Source: Fimbriosthenelais zetlandica
Lineage: Eukaryota
Reading direction: 5' to 3'
Length of the DNA: 64,000 nt
Assembly: GCA_977030845.1 (NCBI GenBank)
Contig: OZ365114.1
Coordinates: 15,934,001-15,998,000, forward strand
The position numbers were made by a program, and so were the translations under genes. Numbering within the stretch: position 1 is the stretch's first letter; every line of letters starts with the position of its first letter. Shown piece after piece: positions 33,301 to 55,203 of the stretch. The notes beneath the pieces are model-generated. The model was not told where the DNA came from and did not search any database. It was given only the letters and a program-made list of their open reading frames with translations.

Positions 33301-36300
33301 TTTAATTTGAGCTTGCATTGTTTTAATGCAATCAGCAGAGCAGCAGGTGGTTCTACCTCTCCCAGCTAGTTTCTCTATTAGTTGTTAGTAGAGAGTGAGT
33401 GGGAGAGTAGAGAGAGATCAATCAGTTGGTTATCAGACACTGGGACTGCAAGTCACTGGAGCAAAGAGGACAGATCCTGCACAGCCAAGGATCCTGAAGT
33501 ATTTAAGAGTGGCAAGAGTCCTGGCTTTTCTATCATTTGCACGCGACCTCCCAACCTGTGCACATCCAGAGGCACAGAACAAGACTTCAACCAAAGAAGA
33601 CTCATATTCTTATCCAACAAGAAGATCACCTCACTTTGCCTACAAAGTGCAACAGCACAATTAATATTATTCATCATTTCCCATTCAGGAGTAAGGATCA
33701 CTGTACTTGTATGCATTCAAGGAAGAACTTTGAAGCTTCAATTAAATCGATCCGGGAAAGGTCCTCACATTAGGTCTATACAAATGATCCTTGGACAATA
33801 ACAATATTATCACAAAATGGATAGAAGGACTTACACCTCAGTCACCCTACTAGGGATCTATTGCTTCTGCATCTTATTTGAACTGGTAGGTCCATCTTCC
33901 AACTTTTTTGTTCTCATTGTTTCGTTAATTGTGCCGTTGATGGCATGCTCAGCATGGGCACACAAAGACTCATCCAATACCATGATGAACAACTCAGACC
34001 ATTTGACAATTTAGGCCATTGATATAATTCTGTGAGGCAAGGCTGTCATTCAGCTGTACCCATGGTTGTTGAAGTCATAATCTCCCTACGCTATTCCAAT
34101 GTATTAAATTACGGTTGACCACATTCGTGACGAAAAGCCATTAGCAAGCTCACAGTACTGAGTCAAAAGAGAAATAGCCAAAAACAAAACACTCCGCCAT
34201 TCAAAGGAGATTCACTGGGGTCTTTGTATACCCAGGGTCTACACAAACTTGGCTGCAAAGTGGTGGGCAGACGTCCCCATCAGCTGATTGCAGAATCACG
34301 CCTCCCCCCCTCTCTCAGCCCTGCCATCCATCTTCCATACACCCGATCATATGGAGCAGGTTTATCTGCTAAAGTCTACACGTGGACCTCAGACAGATTA
34401 ACCACAACTGAAGTGTTTTTTCTTCTAAGCGCACACAATGCCAGTGACAGGTTTCACCCCCTCCTTATAAAGCCGTAGTTGAGTTGGTGTAGTTTTTATT
34501 CCAAATTCAACACTCACCGTCCTCCTTTCCTCTGCTTCTAGTTGCCTTATGCACCCTCCCTTCCACCCCCACTTTCACCCCAGAAGGAAGTCTTTTCTAA
34601 GTCAAGATGACAAACGATATTTATATATCACTCTCTCTAAATAAAGGTCGCTAAGTGGATAAGAGGGATTTGGGAAGAGAATAATTACTGTTGGCAAACT
34701 GCCCACTGGTCAATAGGATCAGATGATTCTACCTGACTGACCCTGACAAAAATATAGAACTATTTATATCCACTATGTCCTTATCAGCAAAGTTCTTTAG
34801 CCATCATTTTAGTTGCTTGCTTTAAGGTTCAGTGACTCTAGGAGTGATACCCAAACAGAAGCCTGCTTATATAAGGTCACAAGTAGCACTAGGATATCCT
34901 GAAGGTGGCTTAGGCTTACCTCAATGTTGGCCACCTGTTGGTATAATTAGACATGTAAGGGAGCAATTTCTCCTTGTTCCGGGATCCTGTGTACCTGGTA
35001 ACCAGGGACCTGGTAGTTAGGGAAGTCCGTCCATCATACCACAAATGACCCTGTCGTACTCAGACTCGGTCAGCTGTTTATGTTGCTATTGTCAACAGAT
35101 CAGATTTTTTGGTAGGATGGACGCGCCTTTTATTCTTAATGGGATGGTCAACTTGCCTCTACTTAGCAAATAATGTACACATGGCTGGTGTAGAGACTTA
35201 GAATATACTCCTTAACCCTAGTTTTAACCCAAAGCTCATTCAAAACTTTATGAATGAGGTCCGATGTTCTTGCCTTGCTGGGGACACGCTTTTCAGCATC
35301 GCTCTTGCGGTTGGTCTGTTTCAGCAAGGTCTCCTTCAGAAGTCTGAGCTTTGATCTCTTCCTTACAATCGATGAAAAGTCTTTATCAATGAGGAAAGTC
35401 AAATTGAAGGCCATTTAGGTGAAAGGTCGGGGGCAGAGGGGGCGTGTGGGGTGTCCTAGGACCTATCAGTCCATGGGTCTGCCCGACCCCAGCAAAGTAT
35501 CATTCTGATCTTTCTGTTCGCGGCAGTGTCACGCCCCTTACCTCCCATGTAGCTTTAGCTAAGTGGGTGGTACTTGAATCCATCTAAATTTAAGCATTGC
35601 ACGCTATATTTATCAAAATAATGGGGTTTCAATGATTTCTCCAGCTATTGCCATGTCGCAGGAGGATTTTTACAGGATCTGTTGACAATATCGGACACGT
35701 CTGATCGTCAAAATAGTTGATGACCTGCTTTGATCGCTTGCCCCAGGGTTCTTCTGATTTCAGAAACGGCCGTGAGCAATTGTATTAACATGGAGGGTAC
35801 ATCATGGGCTAGCTTGTTGAAGAAGACCTGCAGGAGAGCTCTGACATTGAACTGTTGGGTATCTCCTGAAAAGGTTGCCTTCCTGACAACTTCAACTGAC
35901 CACTTGAAGTACTAGGCACATATAGATCATATACCTTCAATCTATTTTCCAAGCTTACATTTGCATCAGAACAAGGTTGACATGGAAGATAGCTAAAGGA
36001 CAGGCTACTTGAACCCATTTCCCATATTAATATGTCAATCATTGGACAATTCAGTGCAAGAGGGCATATTGTATTCCTTAGACAAGATCCATAAAGCTTT
36101 GAACATAAACTGGTGACCTACATAGTTCCAGTCAGCTGATTCTGAAACGCTGCTGACTGTTCCCAGGGAGGAGGAAGAGCACCACCCCCAGAGAAGACAA
36201 ATTTGGAAAACTGCTGAGAGATTTTAGTATTATTATAAGTATATTATAAGACATGCATGGCTTGCAGACCTAACAACTCAGTAGGTGTGTCTAAAATACA

Positions 36301-42100: not shown

Positions 42101-45100
42101 GTTTCCAAACCAGCGCATCTGACAAAGCATCTATGAGTGGTTCACGGTCCCCCAGCTTTCCTAATGGTCTCCTCTATGGGAGAGTAGGTTTTAGCAAGCC
42201 AACTTGCTGGGAAATTTGTATACACACAAACTTACTATAAAACATTTCCAACAATTGTAGACAAACTGAAATTCCCAAGCACTGGTGTGACCCTGGCTAT
42301 AGCAACTGGCACAGTGGATTCAGGGATGCAGAGGAAACTACAGTCATCAATATTTCACATGCTTTTCATGAGACCTAAATGTTCACATTATGTAGGCCTA
42401 TCATTTCATTATGTATTCAGTTTCCATTCAAACTTCTTTAGGGGGTTTCAAGTGATTGTTTCTGGGATATGTCAGATTATTACCAAATTTTGTGAGTTGC
42501 ACCTGCCTCTTATGAAGAATTACAGATGGTAACAGGTTACCATGGCGAGCCTCCTCCCTGAGGGCCTTAAGAGTCAGTGGACCAGATCACCAGGCATAGA
42601 GAGGACAAAGATTTACTGCTCTTTAAAGTTGATTGTTTTACTATCACAACTTATAGCCCCTGGCTTCGTCACTCTGGGACAGACTCCTTCTCCCATGGTA
42701 CATTATTTCCATATAGAACCTGTGATAAAAAGCTAATTCTTGGTGATTCGGAGGTGGGTTTTGATGTCATTGTGTCAAAAGAACACTCATTTCACCCCAG
42801 GGTTGGAGTATATACTCCCAACAAAGACATTCAGGGAGAGAGAGCACTTTTTAATGCATTTTCAATTGGCTCTAAATTGAATTCAATTATCCAAGTGCAG
42901 GTCTATCATTTCTGCACCCCAAGGTACCAACCAACCTCTGAATAAGCCCTAAGAAAGTTTGCTGATGTTTATTCATCTAGAGAGATCAACTTTATAATGA
43001 AGTTATTATAATAAAGTTAGTGGGAATTCGGTAGGGGATTGAAGGCTGGAAAGCATAGGTTTGCCAGGAGGAGTTCTGGTTGAATTTTTCTCATGGTTTT
43101 CACGGGCGATGACTTACATTTCATGCCTTGCTGCGATTCCGCCCATCCAATTGAACCGGCAAAGCAATAACTTGAACTTATGATCAAACCATTCATGTAT
43201 ATATAGACATGTATACACAATATTTTATTCCCTCACTTCTGGCAATCCCTCCGCTGCGCTTCAATTGACCCGGTCTTTTTCGGGGGCAGAAGAGATTCAG
43301 GGTCAGGATCCCTTCTTTGATCCTGTCTTTGGCAGCCCACCAAATGATTGGGCTCAGTGCCAATTCTTAACAGCTCACACTAGTATCTTCCATCTACTCC
43401 CGTAAACCCCCCTTAAAGAATCATGGATGCAAGTTATTGGAGAGCAAATTGGCTTAAAATTGTCAGTGTGGCAAGGTGGAAAGCAATCATACATTTTTCA
43501 GCATGAATTACCAATTACTGAAATCATGTTATGGAAGATTTAATTAGGATAACCCTTATAAAACACATACGATCATGCACAACATCCACCAATAAATCTT
43601 TCATTTTGAATGAAATCCAAAGACATGGGTATTCATCTTGTTGTCAACTGCCATACTTGAACCAACTGGTCTTCCTAAGTTGTAAATCGAGACAATGACA
43701 ATGTCTGGACAAAGAGGTGGGGCTACAACAGACGTTTACAAGCCGCTATACAATGGAAACTGGATGCAATTACTCCATTTGTTTGCTGCTTAGGTACACA
43801 GAGAGACAAGAAAATATCAGGCTTGGTAACCGCAGCAACCTATTTGAACGCATGTGGCAAAGACATAGTAAAAATCATGATTTATTCATGAAGATTATTC
43901 GTAGTTATTGGATGGTAATCGTCTGAAAGTTTAAGGACGCAACAAAATGGTTAAGGGTCCCTTATTTTCAGAAGCTTAAATTTATATCCAAAACAGTTCC
44001 ATGTGAACCAAAAGCTGCCTGATAATAATTAGAATATCTAGGACATCTCTAGCTAGGACATGTATCTAGCTGTTTGCAAGAGGCACTGCCAGACAATGGC
44101 AATAGATAACATCTGAGGATAATCTCCTAGAGCAATCTCAGGCTTCTCATGCAACAGAAGAATGAGAAAAACTCTGAAACAATTGCAACAATGAAGAAAT
44201 TACATCCTGTCTGATTGTCTCTGCAAGGAATTCCAAGCTGATCAATTGCATGGGTTGACACATGCGATGCCAGATAGGACAGTATGATGCCACAGTTTCC
44301 ACACAGACACCTTAATCACATCTCCATTTCGGGGTGATGTTTGACAATAGACAAATTATTCTCTATATCACATCTTTTCTCATGGTAAATTCGCAGCAGT
44401 TGTTATAGTTGTAACACATGGTACACACACATTTGCATTTTAAAGTGTGCAGCATGCATGATGTCAGAGTGACAGGTCCCTCCCCCTCTCAAGTTCTGAT
44501 CTACATTTAGGAGGTTTGTGTGACAGCAGCAAGCATAACCAATAGCTGACAATTACGGGCCGGAAGTCATCAAGTAGTAGTCTGGTCCATGCTGCTCCTC
44601 CCGGGATAACCGAGGTCAGCCAACCAGAACCACGACACTTTAGGCGCGAGGAGGTCCACACGGCAGTGAAAGATCGACCCAGTTTTCCGGTCCAATTTTG
44701 CCCCAGTTTACCTTTAACCATCTTTCTCTCATTGATATAGTGAGTAAAGCATATTGTAGAAGGAACATACAGCAGAGACTTGGTAGTGGAAAAGGGCATC
44801 CGGTACACTTCCAACTTCTCTTCTTTAATGCTGACTGTATGGGGAACAATTGACACTCAAAGCACTTGAGTGGAAGAAAAGTGAGAATGAATGAGGTAGA
44901 ACTTGATTTCCTGCTCTAAAAAGGTCCTATCTATCAACTGGTATCTGTTTCTTCAGGGTTTTTTTAAAATCTAAGGTATCGTGCCAACTGTCTCAGGAAA
45001 AAAGTGTCCACACACTTCAAACGCTTGGTGGGAAAAGCACAAGGCAGACATTATGGCAGAGGGCTTCTACCAATATTCCCCTCTGCCAAGGACTAATCAG

Positions 45101-47957
45101 TTGGCAACGTTGTCAATTCGAAATATGGGGAAAAGGTTTTTTAGTTTGATATGCCTTATTACCGAGATGGTTGCTCAAGCTGGAAATGTTTGAATCGAAA
45201 CTACACCAGTGTGCATAGATACTTATCAACGCTTGGCCTACAACACTTTGCTGAATTCCTCTAGGTTAGGATTGCGGAATGAAAATGATGATTGCGAATA
45301 AATTCTGCAGTCAGGAGCCTGTTTCAAAACAAATATTAGCCATACACTTAGCATTGCTAATATTCCGTTTGAAACAGGCCCCAGGATGCACATACTGGGG
45401 CACAAATTTCTGACATGTAGCAAAGTACATACGATAAGATAATGACGACAATCAAAAAGCAACTTTAATCATATTATGGAGGAAGGCCTTGCTCGAAAGG
45501 ACACCATAAAGATAGAGCGCTATCAGAACGAAGAAAAAAAATACTAATATGTTTATAATGATACTTGCCATTTATATATATCTAAAATTATTTCTTTAAA
45601 TCAATATTACTTAAAGGGATCAACCTCTGGGGCCTCACATAATTACCAAAGATCTCATATATATCCCAATTCCCATTCGAAAGACATGTAGACCACCCCT
45701 AAAACTAAAAGGAAACTTCAATAAGACTAATAGGCTGCTATAACACCATACTGAGTGTAATCACTACATCACTATCTCCATCCCTCACTGGCCTTTTACA
45801 ACTCACTAGAGTTTACCACCCAAGGCCCTGTCATGCCCTTTCTTTGAAAACCTTTGTACAATACCTCATGACCATGACGTATGATCTTGCTGTCGCCCAC
45901 GACGAAATGTCATTATGGTCTCCAAGGTGAGGACATCAGACCTTTCTTTGATCTCATCAGCCTCTTCTCTGTCTCCATAGCTCATGGAGATGCTGTTGTG
46001 CCTATTGCCTACTCAAGTGAGACGGCAAGATCCCATGGGCTGTAGGGGGTAGACCTTTGTAATCTGACAGGTGGCACTGTTAGGGTTAAGCTGCATCCTT
46101 AACCTTTGGAGGAGACCTTTTCCATTGAAAAAACGTATCTTTAGTTAACACCCCATTGGTTCCTTTCTTGCATCATGACGTTGGTGAAAAAGAACATCTT
46201 GATTATATCTCTCCAGCAAAGATGACCTATGTGCACTTTCAATCAGAACAAGGCATTGACATCATATATTTATTGACAGTATTGACAGCAGGTACCAGAA
46301 TCCAACACGGCTTTTCAAGGACCAAAAGTGGACCATTCCCATTCAGCAAGCACGACAACAGCTTACCTCCGGAACTAAACATGCACAAAAAAGATGCATT
46401 AAAACTAGAACTTTAAAAAAAATGAAAGTGGAAGTCTGGAGATGATTGTAATTTAACCATCTGGGCGGAGGTAGTCTGTCCATATAATAACCCTCCCCCT
46501 CTCTCTATTATATATTTTAGTTGTATTGTGTGTGGGGTAGATAGGGTGAGACTGGCTCGAAACATTTTCCACTTCATATCACATGTGGGGTGCCTGACAC
46601 CTTTTTTTTCCATCTCCATCTCGCCACCCAGACAGCATCATATTGAGAAAACCTCTTGAGCCAAGGATACTATAGAGGCAAAGGGCACAGACATGCATAC
46701 ATATTGCCTGCTTCCTTCCTTTTAGTCATTTCACCATTGTTCACAAAGCTTAAAGTTAGGAAAACGTTTTTGATGAAACTGAACTCTGCCTGTACAAAAC
46801 ATAATGATTATCACCTCTTTCAAGGGGGATACAAAATGTAAAAGAGCCACTTGTCGCGCAGACATTGCACTTGTTCATTAAAATAATGGTGAAGACAATG
46901 CCTAATTTCAAATTCATTTCAAGAATTGGTTATGTATATATCTTCCTCCTATCCTCTGCAACATGCCCCATAAGTTTCCTTTCACGGACCAATCTCAACA
47001 ACTGTAGTTTTCCTGAAAGCATGCTCTTCATATATAATTATGATGCTCATGCAAAAACGCATTGCCCCACACATTTATAAAATACGATTAGGCGATCCAT
47101 CTCTATCCCCAGTCGTTAAACACACATTATGTAATGGGTAATAAAAACTGGGGATTGCGGATAAATGTATATCAATGATGTGGTTGTTTAATCTTAAATT
47201 ATATTTTTGGCAAGAGATGCACCTTAGCGGAAATAGTAAGTAAATGTCTTGTCACTCGGCCAGTCTCCCAAGCCTCCTCATTTTTGGCACTTCGCCAAAT
47301 GTATCACACAAATGCTCTCTAAAAGTCGTCTGCGGTTTTTGAGGTTTTGTCACTGAAAAGTATCTCAAATAATATCACAATTAAATTGTTAAGTCACTGA
47401 AAGAGTTGGAAAACGACTTTGCCAGCCGAGTTTTTCTGCTTTTCGTGCATTATTCTCGATAATAGAAGGCAGCTGGAGTTTTGCAGCATTGAGGGCGTTC
47501 TGCTTCTGCTAGCGAGAGGGCAATTTTTCGCTCTCTCCACAGGAAGTGATAAAGCAAATTATTCTGTTTTCTAGACCATAACGTAAAGTATCATATAGCA
47601 CACAAGCTTATACCACCCTGCTTTCTTCCCTACAAATTACCCAACCACCCTGATGTGAAGTGAAGGAAATATAACCCTTCTAAAATATAAACCATTCATA
47701 AAACTTCTACTGAATTTTCGGTAGAACACCTCTTGATTGCATAAATTCCACTACACAAATTATATATATCACCAATGCCCTTCTTTGAAATCATTCACCA
47801 TAGGCAATCTAGAGAGAAAAAGAAACCGCTACCCAAAAGTCTGATGCTTTACATGAACCAAACTGATGTCTTTTTTGAGGTATAATACCTATGAGAAAAA
47901 AATAAAAGGAATTTTATTGAAAATAAAGAAATTTAAAACTTTGCATTTTTTTTGCAG

Positions 47958-48170
47958 ACTAGTGCCTCATTGAGATGGTCGCCCAGAATGATGTTGAGTG
48001 CCAACAGTACAGTAGAAGAGAGAGCCTTGTACGACTGCAGCATACAGAAATGGATGGAGTGCAACTCCTGCCAACCCTGCCAGGAAAGAAAGGAGAAATG
48101 CAAGCAACTCAGATCCATGGCTGCCAGCTGTATCAATGCCGAACCCAAAGATGAGAATACACATCAAAAC
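47958..48170 (+). CDS. Exon: Cys-rich N-terminal segment upstream of the propeptide (phase 0-0)
   Basis: Acceptor tttttttgcag and donor GTAAGC. Only one frame is open across the exon (TSASL...CSIQKWMECNSCQPCQERKEKCKQLRSMAASC...HQN), and its phase fits the next exon. Confidence 0.7.
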
Positions 48171-51100
48171 GTAAGCCATACATATCATTAAATTTCATTA
48201 AAAGCATCTCCTGAAACACTTCTAGATTGGATGTATTAGTTTTGCGGGTATACTGACTGTGGTATTTTTTTGCCTTTCAGTTTATCCGGTCTCCCTTCAG
48301 TCCCAGCTGCTTTGAATCCGACCAAATGTTGGTGGATGAGCAGATAGGGACAGTGATGGACCAACTGTCCAACACATGCGGCAGCCATCGCCGCGTCAAG
48401 CGAAAGATCAGGCGATTTGCTGACTTCCCAATCACCAAATGGGACGACAAGATCTACTACAAGATCGATGGTTCACTAAGTAAGATGATTCTACCTATTT
48501 AAATTGACCTTTTATGTCTCCCTTTTCTCAGAATGCAGAATGCCATCCCATTAATCATTGTAAGAAGACTATAATTTATTCAGAGTATAGTGTATTTTTT
48601 CCCTTCTGGACCTTGACCTGTCAAATTATCTTCCCTCAATAGTTCTATTTGAATGTCATTGAAATACAAATATAATATAGAACAGTGATCAAAGAGCCCA
48701 TTAGGGAAACAAGCGAAACTATTATGCTTGCTTTACCATAGCAAATGTCATTTGAAGAAGTATGTATTTCAATTCCATGGCCTTTGAAAATAGAATAAGA
48801 ACATAATGAAACGTAATGCATTTCAGCGATGTTTCATGTACAACATTATCTTTATAGGAGATCATGAAGCAAGGATGATTCGTAGAGCCATAGGCATGTG
48901 GTCAAAAGACACCTGCCTTGAATTCGCACAGGTCGGCGTTAACCGAAAAATCACAGACAATCATATTCTCTTCTCTAAAGTTGTTGGCTGGGGGTAAGTC
49001 AAAGGTTTTTTTAGAATTTATCCAATGAACTCCTATGATAAAACATTGTCCTCGTATTCTCCCAACGAATCATTCTACAATATGGGATCGTAATACTATG
49101 TTATACTAAGGAGTTCAATGTTGGTTTTTTCAGGTGTTATTCGTACATCGGCAAAGCTTCGGTCATCCCTCAACCCATCTTCCTTTCTTTCACATGTTTT
49201 TCCTCGGTGAGTAATGTGTTAAATATGAAATATTTAATCACTTTCATTATTACCACAATACCGCATTGATAGTTATAATACAGGATATTGTTAGCTATAA
49301 ATTGAATTTTGAATCAATTTTGTCTCCACAGGTGGGGTACATTGCCCATGAAATAGGTCATTCACTGGGATTATTCCACGAGCACCAAAGAATCGACAGG
49401 GATAATTACATTCAAATACGCAAAAACAATATTGGTGACGGAGCAGAAGGCAACTTTGCTATGGTCCTGGCCAAGTTCATTGAAGACAAGAACGTGCCTT
49501 ATGATATGGCTTCAGCAATGCATTACCGTGCAATGGTATGTATCTTCTTAAACTTGTACTGCAGGGTTCAATGCTTTGGTAAAAGACCCAAAGAGGGAAT
49601 CAAGTCTGAACAACTCGGTGATTTTACAGTAGTGACCCAGCGAAGGGCATAGGGGCATAGCATGCATAGACATGCATTAGCTCCAAAAGTAATTAGACCA
49701 TTCTCGGAGGTTTGGCTAATAACCCAATATAGGTATATTATACCTATAAATAAAGGTCCCTGGATATATTGAGAGCTTTATTTTCTTCTCTAGAACCACT
49801 TAAGAGGGTCATTGTTTTGGACCGATAATTACAGCTCCCAGATGCCAAGATAGTATGTGTGAGGGGTGAGGCAGGCATGGCGTGATCAAAGACAGGTATC
49901 AACAAAGGCGGACATTATGAAGAAAACACCTATAGTCTTCATTATCGCTGTTTGCTATATCCCCAGGCCAAAGTCAAGGAGGTGGTCGTGGAGAATAGGG
50001 GGAAAATAGAGCTAGGGTAGAAAAATAAACAGAGATTACTTAATTTGTATGCTTAAACCCTTAATTTCATGTCAAACTAGTGTTGTTTAAGAAAGGACTT
50101 TGGTTCGTCTGAAGCTTTTGTTATGTACACTAAAATTGCAGCCTGTTCCGAGAGTTAATTCATCAATTTAGGTAGTTACTTGACAATATGTTCTAGGAGA
50201 AAAGGGGAAAAAAGAAATAGAAAGAAAAATTGAAGACAAAAAACAGCTTCAAAATTATGTTGAGTTATAGGTCGACGAAGGCCATTAAAGAGGCAGTGGT
50301 GCATAAACATGGTAACTTGTTGCCGTTAAAAAAATCACCCCATTCTATTAAGGAGCGAAAGGGGTAGACAAGTCTCTCTCCTAAGGTACTTTACATAAAG
50401 TATTTATGGACGCTCATATATGGTACTGCAATGCAATATTATCAGAGAGGAAAGGGAAGTGGGTATACATGCATTCTAAATCCTCACTCCTCCAATGATC
50501 AATTGGTTTTTAAGGGCTGGGATGATACACTTTTTATACATGATAACTACCACCTTGGCCACATGCTGATTGCTGCACTTAGTGGCCCCTGTGGTGTCGG
50601 TGGACCGACATTAAGGGATGAGTTTACCTATATCACAGGGTAAATAGAGAGTCCAGATTGCTCTCTATTGTCCTCAGCATCTCTCTATATGTACATAAGC
50701 CAAGCTAACCCCAGATGAAGGGCCTTCTCCCTCACAGTGTTTGGTGAAAGCTTAAGTTTGAAGGATGGGGTTATGATGTTCTGGGCGTGAGCTCGCCACA
50801 TGAAGCTGACAATACTGATGCTGACAATGTGACGTCACTGGACGTGACATATCATCCTCCCAGTGAAGAAGGGTTTTGGTTTTGTTTGACTGAAGGGCTT
50901 TGAAATGTATCGCTGGCACGGAATGAATGATAGGCTATAAAGGGGGTGAAGAATCTACCGCGCTTCCATGTTCAAGGGCAATGTTTCCATGACTACATTG
51001 CCCCAGTGTATATATCTGCAGGGTGAATGCGACCCCCTTTTAGGAATTATTGGGTTGTAGCATGCACTATTTAGTATGCTCAAACAATATCAAACCTAGT

Positions 51101-54100
51101 GAATCTATGAGTGAACTTTGTTGGTGGAAACAGATGCGCAGATGGATGTTCTTTGAAAAGTGTTCAGAAAGTTCAGTAGGATCTTAGACGACTATACGCA
51201 TGTTTCATACATGGTCGACAAGGAGTAAACGGATGCAACATTTTTAGAAGATGGGCGATGTCCGACACAATGAGCAATTGAATTGGGTTAGATTTACCTT
51301 GTAATGGTCATTGCATGTGTGGATGACTATTTTCTGCCCTCTTCCCCTCATGTTCAAAATCCTTTTCTACATATAGAATTACAGTCAAACATCGTGCTCT
51401 ATCCTTGTTTAAATTGGAGTAAAAAGTTAAACAAGGACAGGTACAGACTTGTGCTGGGGATAAAAGGCGGAGGGAATTCTTTAACACAATATGTATAGTA
51501 CTTCCTCAAGTTCCTGGAAGAATATTTTTAAAAGTGGTTTCTTTCTTTTATGTGTAGAAAAATGATACTTGAGAAAAGTTCTAATCATATTCGTCTGTGG
51601 TCATTGCAAGCCTCATTGTAGGCTTTGAATGCCTTTGTTTCTTGAAGTATCACTTCAAAACATATTACTGAGTGGTTCCATCAATTTCAGGCATTTTCGT
51701 CAAATGGAAGGAATACCATTCAAACCGCAAACCCTCTATACCAAAGAACTATTGGGCAACGAGTGGAGCTCTCCTTCTCCGACTTGAAAATAATCAACTT
51801 GGCCTACTGCACTAGTAAGTAGTATTCGAATGACTGTATTGCATGAACATTGAAAGAACGCATGATATAATTATTTTATGTGAAAAATCAAACCCGCTTT
51901 AATCGAGCATAAATTTCCTTTCAGGAAAATGTGCTGGTTCACCACTTCCTCAGCCTTGCCAGAATCGTGGATACCAGGACCATGATGACTGCACGAAATG
52001 TAAATGTCCTGATGGTCTTACAGGCCGATACTGCGAGGATACCAAAGTCAATGGTGAGTGAAAATTTCCCTTTATAGTATCATCCTGAATTAATTTAAGG
52101 AGGAAAGAGCCACGAGAAACTAGAGAATTATTCAGGAACTGTTACTGCTGCTACTTGCATACAGTAGCATGAAAATATAATAAGATGTAGGGCATCCGTT
52201 GGTGATGCTTTCTGTTGGTTTAGTCTTAATAATGGGTGTCTTTATTGATGTTGATTATCTGATTGTTCAGATCAGTGTGGTGGGGATGTGATCGCCTCTA
52301 CAGATGGCAGTAACCCTCCTGGTATCATCTCCTCTCCTGGATACAGCCGAGGTTACTATGATGTGGGCACGGAATGCAGCTGGAGAATCAAGGTATTTTA
52401 TATTTCAATAATTTGTCAAAAATTGTGATTTTGTTATAGCTTACATCGGTAAATCTTTCATTCAACCAAGCTGTCTCATTCAGTCAAGCTCTCTGTAACA
52501 TTACATTGGATGTAATAGTATTCATTGATCGTTGTTTCAGGCACGTGCTGGATACCGTGTCAAAATCAAGTTCAGAGACACTTTCGCAGTATACTGCTTC
52601 TCTAACAGGTGTCGCCATTGGGTAGAGATCAGGCACAGTGGTGACCTAGGAATCACGGGTCCTAGGTAAGGCATTTCACTAACAAGGAGTCAAATTCCTC
52701 TCTTCCATTAACTTGTAAAGGGTGGACTCTTCGTGATGGAATGGCTAACACAATGTCTGGGGTACATTAGAGAGTTCTTGCCGCACTGATAAATCTCGGC
52801 ACATGCTAAATTCGTTAAGTCCAAGGCTTCGGGGCCTGACACATAATCTTAAATTTTCTGAAGGTAGCATGAATATTCAGTTATTCTATTGCTGATCAAA
52901 AAACAGGAGCTAAGACCAAATGATTCGTAGGAGTGGAATTAATAATTATCTGTTTTCTTTCCCTAAAGGTTCTGTTGCTCGGGAACTCCGCAGGAGGTCA
53001 TACTCTCTGAGGGCAATGAGGTCTTGGTCATATTCAAATCCTTGGCTGCCACTAGCATAAAATCCAACAGGAAGGGATTCAAGCTAGAATATACAGAAGG
53101 TATGTATTTTGACTATATACAAAACATTCCAAGGCATATATATTTGACCTTATACAGTTATGTTTTCAATGTTGTCATCTATTTTCTTGTCACGTCTTTT
53201 GAAATACAGGTAAAGCTATCATTTTCCCCCCCACTCTGTTAACACAAATAGCATGACTCTTCAAAGCCGCATATTTTGCCATATGATTACTAACTCCCTC
53301 GTACTTAATCTTTGCAGTGAAGAAGCCCTGCCCAACGAACCCTTGCAAAAATGGCGCCTTTTGCTGGCAATCATCCAGAAGCACCCAGATTTGTGAGTGC
53401 CCTACTGGATACTACGGGCCCTACTGTGACAACTATGGTCATCCAGAAGTACCAACCCAAGCTCCATATCCAACTAGAACATGGCCTGGTTCATCTAACA
53501 CTGACAAAGCTGACATCCTCTTCCTATTAGACTCTAGCGTTCATTCATACAAGCCTTGGAATGATTACGCTCACTTCTTAAGGGAAATGCTCAATTATGT
53601 TACCTTCCATTCGGACACTGATCGTGTGGGTGTTATCACATATGCCCGCTATGCCAATGCCACAGTTCAACTAGGATCCCATAGCAATCCTGATGGCATC
53701 ATTGATATAGTCCAGGGGGTCAGTCTCCAACCATGGCAGGCCAACCCATACAAGCCGCTCTGGCTGCTTCAACACGAAGTGCTCTTGGATACATATCGCA
53801 ACCGTAAGGATGTGCCAGATGTGGCAGTCATCGTTACAGACTCTAACTTCCCAGATAACTTCCCCCAGGGGATCATAGTCCAGGGGGCCATGCAGGCAAG
53901 GGAAGCAGGCATCAGTATCGTGGCTGTTGGGGTAGGGCATGAGGTGAGAAGGAGCACACTCAATGTCCTCGCCGGAGGAAATGACAAATCCTTCATGCTC
54001 ACCTATGAGCAACTCCACAGTAGTAATCAGGCTCGGCAGGTTATGGACAAAGTCAGGGAACTAGGTACGAACCATCAGATAACATTTAAAATAAGATAAA

Positions 54101-55182
54101 CTGACAATATACTGAAATTCATGATAACATGTAATTTCATCATTTTGTGTTGCATATCAAACTGCAGTTACTTTTATTATATTATGGTATTATGATATAT
54201 TTTTATATATTTATAGCCAATGCAGGATCTAGCGGTGTAGACAGACAAGAAGGAAGTCCAACCCCAACTCCAAGATCCACCACATCAACAACAGAACCCA
54301 CAACATCAACAACAACAACAACTAGGGCAACTACAACCACTCGTCCAACAACAACGACAACCAGACGTCCAAGATGGAGGCCACGGCCAAGGACTACCAC
54401 CACATCTACAACAACTACCACCACAACAACTACTACAACTAGACCAACCACTACAACAACAACAACCAAAAAACCTACAACAACCACAACAACACCAAGG
54501 CCAACACCAAGACCAACACCAAGGCCGCTGCCTGCTCGGCCAGGTAGCCAGTCACGTGATAGCCAGCCTCGCGGTATCCAGCCTCATGTTAGGCCATCAC
54601 CAGGTCGCCAGTCGGAATCTTGCTGGTGGGAAAAAGTGGGCAACTGTTCAGAACCCTGTGGTGGTTGTGGAAGACAAAAATGGCGATATCTATGTCGGCA
54701 ACGGAACGGAGCAGAGCAAGAGTAAGTTTATACTACTGTTTTGGTTACTCATTAATGTGAATGATAGCAAACCCTAATCTGCTGTGACATTGTCTAATAT
54801 TATATTTCGAGTCTTGATTGTAAAGAAAATAAGCCCTAATCAAAGTATCCTTCTCTTTCAGGCTCGCTACACGGAGTGAGCCATGCAACGATATGAAATG
54901 CCAAGGATGGTGCTTGATGTATATTGCTAGAGTTTATTATATGTAAGTATCTAATATGCCATAATATCTTCCAATATCAATGGTAGCTATGTCAAAGTAT
55001 GACTACATAATAGTTAACAAGTGTCACCAAATCTTATAAAGTAAATGACCTATAAAGGAAAAAAACATACCTTTTGATGTAAGCTCTAATTTCTTGATCT
55101 TCCTTTCAGGCCATGCGGTCCAGAGTGCTGCGGCGACTATAAACCACAAGGCCAAAGATGTGTTCGGGCGCAAACGGTGTGA
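47958..55182 (+). CDS. Multi-exon astacin-family (M12A) zinc metalloprotease: Cys-rich segment, propeptide, astacin, EGF, CUB, EGF, VWA, Thr-rich stalk, TSP1 (BP10/SpAN- and nematode NAS-35-38-like); 5' exon(s) not located
   Basis: Manually spliced exons 47958-48170, 48281-48479, 48858-48993, 49134-49206, 49332-49535, 51691-51814, 51925-52053, 52271-52392, 52541-52665, 52969-53099, 53318-54064, 54217-54721, 54862-54942, 55110-55182. All are GT-AG with matching phases and total 2862 nt (954 codons including TGA). Motifs: FESD, RRVKR, HEIGHSLGLFHE, SAMHY, CUB with RFCC, TSP1 with CSEPCGGCG. Confidence 0.93.
48281..48479 (+). CDS. Exon: propeptide, furin-type site and start of astacin domain
   Basis: FIRSPFSPSCFESDQMLVDEQ...HRRVKRKIRRFADFPITKWDDKIYYKIDGSL; acceptor tgcctttcag, donor GTAAGA. 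Confidence 0.92.
48858..48993 (+). CDS. Exon: astacin domain (IRRAIGMWSKDTCLEF)
   Basis: Astacin-typical AI..W...TCL.F; acceptor ctttatag, donor GTAAGT; phase 1-2. Confidence 0.93.
49134..49206 (+). CDS. Exon: astacin domain (CYSYIG)
   Basis: CYSYIGKASVIPQPIFLSFTCFSS; acceptor ttttttcag, donor GTGAGT; phase 2-0. Confidence 0.92.
49332..49535 (+). CDS. Exon: astacin catalytic zinc-binding motif and Met-turn
   Basis: HEIGHSLGLFHEHQRIDRD (HExxHxxGxxH+E) and SAMHY; acceptor tctccacag, donor GTATGT. Confidence 0.97.
51691..51814 (+). CDS. Exon: C-terminal part of astacin domain
   Basis: AFSSNGRNTIQTANPLYQRTIGQRVELSFSDLKIINLAYC; follows a 2.15-kb intron; donor GTAAGT. Confidence 0.94.
51925..52053 (+). 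CDS. Exon: EGF-like domain 1
   Basis: KCAGSPLPQPCQNRGYQDHDDCTKCKCPDGLTGRYCE; phase 1-1. Confidence 0.94.
52271..52392 (+). CDS. Exon: CUB domain part 1
   Basis: QCGGDVIAS...IISSPGYSRGYYDVGTECSWRIK. Confidence 0.93.
52541..52665 (+). CDS. Exon: CUB domain part 2
   Basis: ARAGYRVKIKFRDTFAVYCFSNRCRHWVEIRHSGDLGITGPR; donor GTAAGG. Confidence 0.93.
52969..53099 (+). CDS. Exon: CUB domain part 3
   Basis: FCCSGTPQEVILSEGNEVLVIFKS...GFKLEYTE; donor GTATGT. Confidence 0.93.
53318..54064 (+). CDS. Exon: EGF-like domain 2 plus von Willebrand factor A domain
   Basis: CPTNPCKNGAFC...CECPTGYYGPYC, then ADILFLLDSS, RVGVITYA, VAVIVTDS, GISIVAVGVG; acceptor ctttgcag, donor GTACGA; phase 1-1. Confidence 0.92.
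54217..54721 (+). CDS. Exon: Thr/Pro-rich mucin-like stalk and start of TSP1 domain
   Basis: Poly-Thr tracts, then SCWWEKVGNCSEPCGGCGRQKWRYLC; acceptor atttatag, donor GTAAGT. Confidence 0.9.
54862..54942 (+). CDS. Exon: TSP1 domain continuation
   Basis: LATRSEPCNDMKCQGWCLMYIARVYY; phase 2-2; donor GTAAGT. Confidence 0.87.
55110..55182 (+). CDS. Terminal coding exon
   Basis: PCGPECCGDYKPQGQRCVRAQTV-stop; a Cys-Cys tail like those of astacin-TSP1 proteins; TGA at 55180-55182. Confidence 0.87.
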
Positions 55183-55197
55183 CCATCGACGTCATCT

Positions 55198-55203
55198 AAT
55201 AAA
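55198..55203 (+). terminator. Candidate polyadenylation signal AATAAA of the astacin gene
   Basis: Canonical hexamer 15 nt after the stop codon. The region is AT-rich, so chance is possible. Confidence 0.45.

What the first reader, a model, noticed from the sequence alone, without database searches (positions are those of the whole stretch)
47958..55182. Astacin protease with an unusual EGF-CUB-EGF-VWA-mucin-TSP1 tail
The astacin-EGF-CUB core with RFCC and the CGGCG-type TSP1 end match nematode NAS-35 to NAS-38 and, for the core, echinoderm BP10/SpAN. I know of no described member with a VWA domain between CUB and TSP1. VWA domains commonly bind collagen or matrix, and DPY-31/NAS-35 processes cuticle collagens, so this may be a matrix-tethered procollagen or cuticle protease on a glycosylated stalk (inference). 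All catalytic residues look intact.
Basis: partly seen in the sequence, partly recalled or inferred. Interest (0 to 1): 0.72.

Follow-up and report, generated by a model that had tools for sequence, protein, structure and literature searches.

The report
Annelid astacin protease carrying VWA domain
This is a real, intact gene in an annelid worm for a secreted zinc protease of the astacin family that has picked up an extra matrix-protein module (EGF+VWA) and a sugar-coated stalk. The same layout is kept in a second, distant worm, so it is a modestly interesting new domain combination rather than a new kind of system.

Summary
A 14-exon, all GT-AG gene on the + strand (47958-55182) gives one open 950-codon frame. 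Its order is: Cys-rich propeptide with an FESD Asp-switch-like motif and a furin site, a complete astacin catalytic domain (HEIGHSLGLFHE, SAMHY), EGF, CUB, EGF+VWA on one phase 1-1 exon, a 128-residue Thr/Pro/Arg mucin stretch, and a divergent TSP1-like module.

- **Missing piece:** the signal-peptide exon lies upstream and was not located.
- **Conservation:** a 10.4-kb contig from a deeply diverged relative (synonymous sites saturated) has exons 1-13 in the same order. It keeps conserved splice sites and has dN of 0.03-0.29, VWA exon included.
- **One gene, not two:** intron 10 is 218 nt, with a TACTAAC branch site, no poly(A) signal and no upstream in-frame Met.
- **VWA:** the modelled fold resembles collagen VI, PTMP1, integrin alpha1 I and vWF A3 domains, but the MIDAS site is degenerate (DxSxH, Thr lost).
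- **Host:** an annelid, judged from mitochondrial gene order.
- **Novelty:** no astacin+VWA protein appeared in the papers searched, or among the 150 best VWA matches out of 1.84 billion representative proteins.
- **Not testable here:** no RNA run was listed, so exon joining is unproven, and a database-wide architecture query could not be run.

Verdict: a new variant of a known kind, of moderate interest. The scan also noted the EGF+VWA exon separately (s1-196227).

The parts
47958..48170 (+). Exon 1 (phase 0-0). Holds the probable end of the signal peptide and a six-Cys N-terminal part of the propeptide. A signal-peptide exon must lie upstream.
   Evidence: The AG acceptor and GT donor are present. 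The frame is conserved in L001 from the first codon, with 74% identity and dN 0.15. Pfam finds no family.
48281..48479 (+). Exon 2. Holds the rest of the propeptide, with the FESD Asp-switch-like motif and the basic RVKR-KIRR furin-type site, then the first residues of the mature catalytic domain.
   Evidence: Motifs were located in the model. L001 shows 79% identity and dN/dS 0.08.
48858..48993 (+). Exon 3, astacin catalytic domain (profile positions about 19-44 and onward), with the first conserved Cys.
   Evidence: Pfam Astacin partial hit, E 0.016. Conserved in L001 at 75% identity with conserved splice sites.
49134..49206 (+). Exon 4, astacin catalytic domain (profile 57-77), holding the Cys pair of the second disulfide.
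   Evidence: Pfam Astacin partial hit, E 0.11. 92% identical in L001.
49332..49535 (+). Exon 5, astacin active-site exon with the zinc motif HEIGHSLGLFHE and the Met-turn SAMHY.
   Evidence: Pfam Astacin E 2e-23, profile 79-145. Aligns without gaps to BMP1/TLL1 and ZHE1. 96% identical in L001.
51691..51814 (+). Exon 6, C-terminal part of the astacin domain (profile 147-189), ending in the last conserved Cys.
   Evidence: Pfam Astacin E 4e-8. 90% identical in L001.
51925..52053 (+). Exon 7 (phase 1-1), EGF-like module 1 with six Cys.
   Evidence: Pfam EGF_2 E 0.025. Cys pattern seen in the model. 86% identical in L001.
52271..53099 (+). Exons 8, 9 and 10 (52271-52392, 52541-52665, 52969-53099). 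Together they form one CUB domain bounded by phase-1 introns.
   Evidence: Pfam CUB hits to profile 6-32 (E 0.048) and 76-110 (E 0.07). The exon 8 piece hits neuropilin-1 and PCPE-1 CUBs in the PDB (E 0.01). 69-80% identical in L001 with conserved splice sites.
53318..54064 (+). Exon 11 (747 nt, phase 1-1), EGF module 2 plus a Pro-rich linker plus a VWA domain with a degenerate MIDAS site.
   Evidence: Pfam EGF 8e-7 and VWA 8e-19. AF2 model pLDDT 84 with a VWA fold. Foldseek top hits are collagen VI alpha3 N2/N5, PTMP1, integrin alpha1 I and vWF A1/A3. Orthologous exon in L001 is 71% identical, dN 0.21. Single copy in the genome.
54226..54611 (+). Exon 12, first part: a Thr/Pro/Arg-rich mucin-like stalk of 128 residues.
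   Evidence: Composition is 52 Thr, 22 Pro and 19 Arg out of 128. L001 has a Thr-rich stretch of different length at the same place.
54612..54721 (+). Exon 12, second part: first half of the TSP1-like module (WW..CS.PCGGCG..WRY.C).
   Evidence: Conserved in L001. No Pfam or PDB hit for this half alone. hhalign of the two orthologous tails against five TSP1 repeats gives probability 72%, P 3.5e-5. Single copy in the genome.
54862..54942 (+). Exon 13 (81 nt, phase 2-2): second half of the TSP1-like module, then a hydrophobic segment ending YYM. If the next intron is retained, a TAA stop follows at once.
   Evidence: 88% identical in L001. In the last 13 codons all seven differences are synonymous. 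AG and GTAAGT are conserved.
55110..55182 (+). Exon 14: a Cys-rich C-terminal 23 residues and the TGA stop. AATAAA lies 16 nt downstream, at 55198.
   Evidence: The acceptor and the frame join to exon 13. Poly(A) signal found. Not verifiable in L001, because the contig ends first.

Best explanation
One single-copy gene of an annelid encodes a secreted, zymogen-type astacin (M12A) zinc endopeptidase.

Shown here:
- The catalytic domain is complete and intact.
- It is followed by EGF, CUB, a second EGF fused to a VWA domain on one symmetric phase 1-1 exon, a Thr/Pro mucin stretch and a divergent TSP1-like Cys module.
- The whole arrangement, VWA exon included, is kept under purifying selection in a second, deeply diverged species.
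- Every extracellular module is bounded by phase-1 introns.

Inferred:
- The EGF+VWA exon was inserted by exon shuffling from a matrilin / collagen VI / AMACO-type matrix protein into an astacin-EGF-CUB-TSP1 scaffold of the kind known from nematode NAS-33 to -38.
- The enzyme is made with a signal peptide from an upstream exon that I did not find.
- It is held latent by its propeptide (FESD Asp-switch) and released by a furin-type convertase at RVKR/KIRR.
- It then acts in the extracellular matrix. The VWA and the TSP1-like end would serve as anchoring or targeting modules, and the O-glycosylated stalk as a stiff spacer.
- Because the MIDAS site is degenerate, any VWA binding is more likely metal-independent, as in vWF A3 or collagen VI N-domains, than integrin-like.
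- The substrate (cuticle or other collagen, or another matrix protein) is unknown.
For: Gene model: 14 GT-AG exons and one open frame.

Domains: Pfam, PDB and profile evidence is.

Orthologous locus L001: exons 1-13 are collinear, all AG/GT sites are conserved, amino-acid identity is 63-96%, dN is 0.03-0.29 with dS saturated, and length differences are multiples of three.

One gene rather than two: intron 10 is 218 nt with a TACTAAC branch site and no poly(A) signal. The exon 11 frame is open only from 53287 with no upstream Met, and its first Met lies inside the VWA.

VWA: fold and structural neighbours; MIDAS state from a 30-sequence alignment.

Intron phases: EGF 1-1, CUB 1-1, EGF+VWA 1-1.

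Copy number: single copy, and no paralogue above about 54% identity in the catalytic exon.

Host: annelid, from mitochondrial gene order matched to PMC2639372.
Against: - No transcript evidence: no RNA or DNA run was listed for this sequence, so inclusion of exon 11 in mature mRNA is unproven. Because the exon is symmetric, an isoform without VWA is possible.
- The signal-peptide exon was not found.
- The last exon is unverified.
- Pfam does not recognise the TSP1-like module from its first half.
- Each CUB hit is below Pfam's cut-off when taken alone.
- The degenerate MIDAS site leaves VWA ligand binding open.
- There is no functional data of any kind.
Confidence: 0.62

Rival explanations
1. 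The EGF+VWA exon is an alternative cassette. The main product would then be astacin-EGF-CUB-mucin-TSP1-like, with the VWA form a minor or tissue-specific isoform.
For: Exon 11 is 747 nt and phase 1-1, so skipping it keeps the frame. Its donor here (GTACGA) is weaker than most others in the gene. No RNA data exclude skipping.
Against: The exon is under clear purifying selection in two deeply diverged species (dN 0.21, dS saturated). Its donor in the relative is a strong GTGAGT. Constitutive 1-1 exons are the rule in modular matrix proteins, so symmetry alone says little.
Confidence: 0.2
2. Two adjacent genes have been read as one: an astacin-EGF-CUB protease gene and a separate EGF-VWA-mucin-TSP1-like matrix protein gene.
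For: No transcript evidence is available. Many proteins consisting of EGF-VWA repeats alone exist.
Against: Only 218 nt separate exon 10 from exon 11. That gap has a consensus branch site and acceptor and no poly(A) signal. Exon 10 ends at a conserved GT donor with no stop codon. Exon 11 has no initiator Met or signal peptide in frame. The spacing (about 215 nt) and the phases are the same in the relative.
Confidence: 0.05
3. The gene is as modelled, but the enzyme is a developmental signalling or hatching-type protease, like sea-urchin SpAN/BP10 or tolloid. On this reading the VWA would mediate oligomerisation or regulation rather than matrix anchoring.
For: The nearest solved catalytic domains are BMP1/TLL1 and a fish hatching enzyme. 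VWA domains with a degenerate MIDAS site, as in collagen VI and matrilins, often serve assembly (general knowledge). A Thr-rich region also occurs in SpAN/BP10 (from memory).
Against: There is only one CUB domain, so the tolloid architecture is not met. The structural neighbours of the VWA are matrix proteins. None of this distinguishes substrates.
Confidence: 0.13

Closest known systems
Nematode astacins of subgroup V (NAS-33 to NAS-38, including DPY-31/NAS-35, NAS-36 and NAS-37)
   Same: The order is the same: signal peptide, propeptide, astacin, EGF, CUB and a C-terminal TSP1-type module. The zinc site and Met-turn are intact. These enzymes act on the collagenous cuticle: DPY-31 processes SQT-3, and NAS-36 and NAS-37 are needed for moulting (PMC11304992). 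The domain order of the nematode enzymes is from my own knowledge of Mohrlen et al. 2003 and Park et al. 2010.
   Different: This gene has an extra EGF+VWA module and a 128-residue mucin stalk between CUB and the TSP1-like end. The TSP1-like module is divergent and not recognised by Pfam from its first half. The host is an annelid. Orthology was not tested by phylogeny.
Sea-urchin blastula proteases SpAN / BP10
   Same: Both have an astacin domain followed by EGF and CUB and contain a Thr-rich region (from memory).
   Different: SpAN/BP10 have two CUB domains and no VWA or TSP1-like module, and the Thr-rich region sits elsewhere. There is no evidence of orthology.
BMP1 / tolloid procollagen C-proteinases
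   Same: The catalytic exon aligns without gaps and scores best against BMP1/TLL1. Both have furin-activated propeptides and CUB and EGF accessory modules.
   Different: Tolloids have three to five CUB domains and Ca-binding EGFs and lack VWA, mucin and TSP1. This protein has a single CUB.
Matrilins, AMACO (VWA2), collagen VI N-domains and mussel byssus PTMP1 (EGF-VWA matrix modules)
   Same: The exon 11 module is EGF directly followed by VWA. It gives the best sequence and fold matches to these proteins.
   Different: Those proteins are non-enzymatic and mostly carry several VWA domains. In this protein there is a single VWA with a degenerate MIDAS site (DxSxH, Thr lost) and without the flanking Cys pair, and it is fused to a protease.

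Membership tests
Astacin family (MEROPS M12A, Pfam PF01400) | Zinc-binding consensus HExxHxxGxxHE | tested here: met
   HEIGHSLGLFHE lies in exon 5. Pfam Astacin E 2e-23. Ungapped alignment to BMP1.
Astacin family (MEROPS M12A, Pfam PF01400) | Met-turn SxMHY with the Tyr zinc ligand | tested here: met
   SAMHY at model residues 268-272. It aligns to the SIMHY of BMP1.
Astacin family (MEROPS M12A, Pfam PF01400) | Complete catalytic domain with the four conserved Cys of the two disulfides | tested here: met
   Pfam hits on exons 3-6 cover profile positions about 19-189 in order. By eye, exon 2 supplies the mature N-terminus. The four Cys lie at model positions 157, 184, 204 and 315.
Astacin family (MEROPS M12A, Pfam PF01400) | Secretory zymogen: signal peptide, propeptide with Asp-switch, basic activation site | tested here: inconclusive
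   FESD and RVKR-KIRR are present. The signal-peptide exon was not located; there are only unverified candidates at 33817-33885, 44337-44384 and 45984-46016.
Nematode-type astacin-EGF-CUB-TSP1 architecture (NAS subgroup V) | EGF then CUB directly after the catalytic domain | tested here: met
   EGF_2 E 0.025 with six Cys on exon 7. CUB N- and C-terminal profile hits on exons 8 and 10. Neuropilin and PCPE CUB hits in the PDB.
Nematode-type astacin-EGF-CUB-TSP1 architecture (NAS subgroup V) | C-terminal TSP1 domain directly after CUB | tested here: not met
   About 380 residues (EGF, VWA, mucin) lie between CUB and the TSP1-like module. The module itself is only weakly TSP1-like.
Nematode-type astacin-EGF-CUB-TSP1 architecture (NAS subgroup V) | Catalytic domain groups with NAS-33 to -38 in a tree | not tested
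   No nematode or other reference astacin sequences could be obtained. The spliced protein could not be given to the database tools.
BMP1/tolloid subfamily | Three or more CUB domains interleaved with Ca-binding EGF | tested here: not met
   Only one CUB (exons 8-10) lies in the open frame.
VWA domain (Pfam PF00092) | Profile match and Rossmann-like alpha/beta fold | tested here: met
   VWA E 7.8e-19, above the curated cut-off. AF2 model pLDDT 84. Foldseek probability 1.00 with TM by target 0.8 to collagen VI, integrin I and vWF A domains.
VWA domain (Pfam PF00092) | Intact MIDAS site (DxSxS ... T ... D) | tested here: not met
   In alignment A1 the motif reads D-S-S-V-H. The Thr column holds Ala and only the TD(S) Asp is kept. 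The orthologue has D-R-S-I-H and the same loss.
TSP1 repeat (Pfam PF00090) | WxxW...CSxTCGxG...RxR...C pattern with six Cys and a profile match | tested here: inconclusive
   The exon 12 half gives no Pfam or PDB hit. A five-sequence TSP1 HMM scores 4.3 bits for the window tail and 7.8 bits for the L001 tail. hhalign gives probability 72%, P 3.5e-5 over 46 columns. There is an extra Cys in CGG-C-G and one canonical Cys is missing. The full spliced domain was not run against Pfam.

The most novel reading that the evidence does not exclude
An annelid lineage built a new class of matrix-anchored astacin by shuffling a matrilin / collagen VI-type EGF+VWA exon and a mucin stalk into an astacin-EGF-CUB-TSP1 scaffold. 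On this reading the enzyme is the worm's cuticle- or collagen-processing protease, held at its substrate by a metal-independent VWA. That would parallel nematode DPY-31 while adding a tethering mechanism not described for any astacin.
Probability: 0.22. Interest if true: 0.55.

Novelty: new variant of a known kind. Interest (0 to 1): 0.36.

Why it matters
Astacins are specified largely by their non-catalytic modules: CUB and EGF in tolloids, MAM and TRAF in meprins, TSP1 in nematode cuticle enzymes. A conserved astacin with a VWA domain on a mucin stalk would add a new way of placing such a protease in the matrix. It is also a clean, datable example of phase 1-1 exon shuffling between a structural matrix protein and a protease. 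If it acts on the collagenous annelid cuticle, it would allow a test of whether cuticle collagen processing by astacins is shared between annelids and nematodes. Without expression or biochemical data it remains a plausible but ordinary piece of extracellular domain shuffling.

Tried and rejected
- **RNA evidence.** The look-up of sequencing runs was busy three times and then listed no run for the 5.9-kb stretch or for exon 11 alone. Read laying therefore could not be used.
- **Database search with the full-length protein.** This was not possible.
- **Searches with single exons.**
  - Exon 11 found only the ORF fragment P0003.
  - Exon 5 found only a 52%-identical fragment.
  - The exhaustive search with exon 11 gave 1223 hits. 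None of the top 150 has an astacin domain, but that list favours multi-VWA proteins and would miss single-VWA proteins below about 85 bits.
- **Atlas and AFDB searches.** They showed only EGF/VWA matrix families.
- **Contigs carrying the other two VWA fragments.** Those for P0136 (56% identity) and P0076 (36%) gave no DNA.
- **Signal-peptide exon.** Scans for ATG, a hydrophobic run and a phase-0 donor gave only unverifiable candidates. The conserved block at 47188-47602 is non-coding.
- **Conserved blocks in intron 5.** I tested them as possible extra exons. They have stops in all frames.
- **Rfam.** Nothing found in the window.
- **CUB region.** It found nothing among the fetched proteins. 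The exon 10 piece found no CUB in the PDB.
- **Run accessions.** They are not in the paper library.
- **Readings rejected.** A pseudogene (frame intact, dN far below dS) and two separate genes.

Full report
**1. What is there**

Translating the + strand between 47.7 and 55.4 kb shows a chain of open segments with recognisable astacin, EGF, CUB and VWA sequence. Joining them at canonical sites gives 14 exons, all AG...GT, and a single open frame of 950 codons ending at the TGA at 55180-55182. AATAAA lies 16 nt after the stop.

Exon 13 (54862-54942) was found through its conservation in a related contig. It carries the second half of the TSP1-like module.

**2. Domains**

- **Astacin.** Pfam hits on the exon pieces cover profile positions about 19-189 in order over exons 3-6 (E 2e-23 for exon 5, 4e-8 for exon 6). 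By eye, exon 2 supplies the mature N-terminus. HEIGHSLGLFHE, SAMHY and the four conserved Cys are present. The active-site exon aligns without gaps to BMP1/TLL1 and a fish hatching enzyme.
- **Propeptide.** It has a six-Cys N-terminal part with no Pfam family, an FESD motif that resembles the astacin Asp-switch, and RVKR-KIRR just before the mature N-terminus. The roles of these motifs are inferred.
- **EGF 1.** Exon 7, phase 1-1 (EGF_2 E 0.025).
- **CUB.** Exons 8-10. The two ends hit the two ends of the CUB profile (E 0.048 and 0.07). The exon 8 piece hits the CUB domains of neuropilin-1 and PCPE-1 in the PDB (E 0.01). The middle exon alone hits nothing.
- **EGF 2 plus VWA.** Exon 11, a single 747-nt phase 1-1 exon (EGF 8e-7, VWA 8e-19).
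- **Mucin stretch and TSP1-like start.** Exon 12 starts with 128 residues, of which 52 are Thr, 22 Pro and 19 Arg. It ends with WW..CS.PCGGCG..WRY.C.
- **TSP1-like module.** The exon 12 half alone gets no Pfam or PDB hit. A small HMM made from five natural TSP1 repeats scores it weakly. A profile of the two orthologous tails aligns to those repeats over 46 columns with hhalign probability 72% and P 3.5e-5. I therefore call it TSP1-like and divergent.

**3. Is it one real gene?**

No RNA or DNA run was listed, so I used comparative evidence instead.

The only close database match to exon 11 is an ORF fragment, P0003 (71% identity). It lies on a 10.4-kb Logan contig, L001. That contig carries exons 1 to 13 in the same order and on the same strand. 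Details:
- Every acceptor and donor is conserved.
- Amino-acid identity is 63-96%.
- dN is 0.03-0.29, while synonymous sites are saturated.
- Length differences are multiples of three.

In the last 13 codons of exon 13, all seven nucleotide differences are synonymous.

Intron 10 is 218 nt here and about 215 nt in L001. It has a TACTAAC branch site and no poly(A) signal. The exon 11 frame has no upstream Met, and its first Met lies inside the VWA. Two separate genes are therefore very unlikely. Exon skipping cannot be excluded.

Exon 1 begins at a conserved acceptor with what looks like a signal-peptidase site, so a short 5' exon is missing. The candidates are unverified.

**4. The VWA domain**

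An AF2 model built from a 30-sequence alignment has pLDDT 84 and the expected alpha/beta fold. Its closest solved structures are collagen VI alpha3 N2/N5, mussel byssus PTMP1, integrin alpha1 I and vWF A1/A3. Its closest predicted families are matrilin-2-like, VWA2/AMACO and MUA-3. The best-scoring named sequence relatives are giant EGF-VWA repeat proteins of Branchiostoma, a Hydra collagen VI-like protein and a bivalve VWA protein.

The MIDAS site is degenerate: D-S-S-V-H instead of DxSxS, and Ala in place of the Thr; only the TD Asp is kept. The orthologue shows the same state. The flanking Cys pair common in matrix VWA domains is also absent.

**5. Context**

- The genome is 447 Mb in 79 contigs, and the window lies on C21.
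- Contig C79 is a 15,667-bp mitochondrial genome with all protein genes on one strand. Their order is cox1-cox2-cox3-nad6-cob-atp6-nad5-nad4L-nad4-(rRNAs)-nad1-nad3-nad2. This shows all four derived features of the annelid pattern described in PMC2639372, so the host is an annelid.
- The genome has at least 48 astacin exon matches, several in tandem clusters.
- This gene has no close paralogue: the best is about 54% identity in the catalytic exon.
- Exon 11 and the TSP1-like piece are single copy.

**6. Mechanism**

- *Shown:* an intact, conserved, modular astacin gene whose modules are all bounded by phase-1 introns.
- *Inferred:* secretion, latency through the propeptide, furin-type activation, and matrix association through the VWA and the TSP1-like end, with the mucin stretch as a spacer.
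- The degenerate MIDAS site argues for metal-independent binding if the VWA binds at all.
- A cuticle-collagen role, by analogy with DPY-31 (PMC11304992), is attractive because annelids have a collagenous cuticle, but nothing here tests it.

**7. Novelty**

- Four full-text searches found no astacin described with a VWA domain. Papers that hold both terms treat them as separate proteins.
- None of the 150 best VWA matches among 1.84 billion representatives has an astacin domain. Any annotated orthologue with roughly 33% or more identity in this module should have been in that list.
- The only close relatives are raw ORF fragments from unannotated assemblies: P0003 at 71%, P0136 at 56% and P0076 at 36% identity.
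- This points to a lineage-restricted variant. An architecture-level query of InterPro was not possible, so I cannot exclude that unreviewed astacin+VWA entries exist.

I rate it a new variant of a known kind, of moderate interest.

Noticed in passing
window 47188-47602: A 415-nt block 350-770 nt upstream of exon 1 is 68% identical to L001:683-1082, although synonymous sites between the two species are saturated. It is single copy in the genome and has no conserved reading frame. It may be a conserved regulatory element in the first intron or the promoter.
   Followed up: partly
window 51371-51452 (intron 5); also 49797-49963 and 50534-50677: Three conserved non-coding blocks lie in the 2.2-kb intron 5. 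The first is 83% identical over 84 nt and single copy. In this species it folds into a hairpin with an 11-bp perfect stem (z -3.7), but the fold is not kept in the relative. There is no Rfam match.
   Followed up: partly
G000:C79 (loci L006, L007): A complete-looking 15,667-bp mitochondrial contig, 34% GC, with all protein genes on one strand in the annelid gene order. ARAGORN with bacterial settings found only one tRNA.
   Followed up: partly
G000:C21:11.07-11.38 Mb, C11:3.47-3.57 Mb, C11:5.21-5.33 Mb: The astacin family is expanded, with at least 48 exon-level matches. It includes tandem clusters: five near-identical copies on C11 around 3.5 Mb and six hits on C21 around 11.1-11.4 Mb. Several hits have in-frame stops.
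   Followed up: no
window 33817-33885, 44337-44384, 45984-46016: Short ATG-initiated hydrophobic ORFs that end at phase-0 GT donors. Any one of them could be the missing signal-peptide exon; none could be verified.
   Followed up: partly
window 54943-54945: The donor of intron 13 overlaps a TAA (ATG|TAAGT read through). Retaining the intron would end the protein 23 residues early. The arrangement is identical in the related species.
   Followed up: partly
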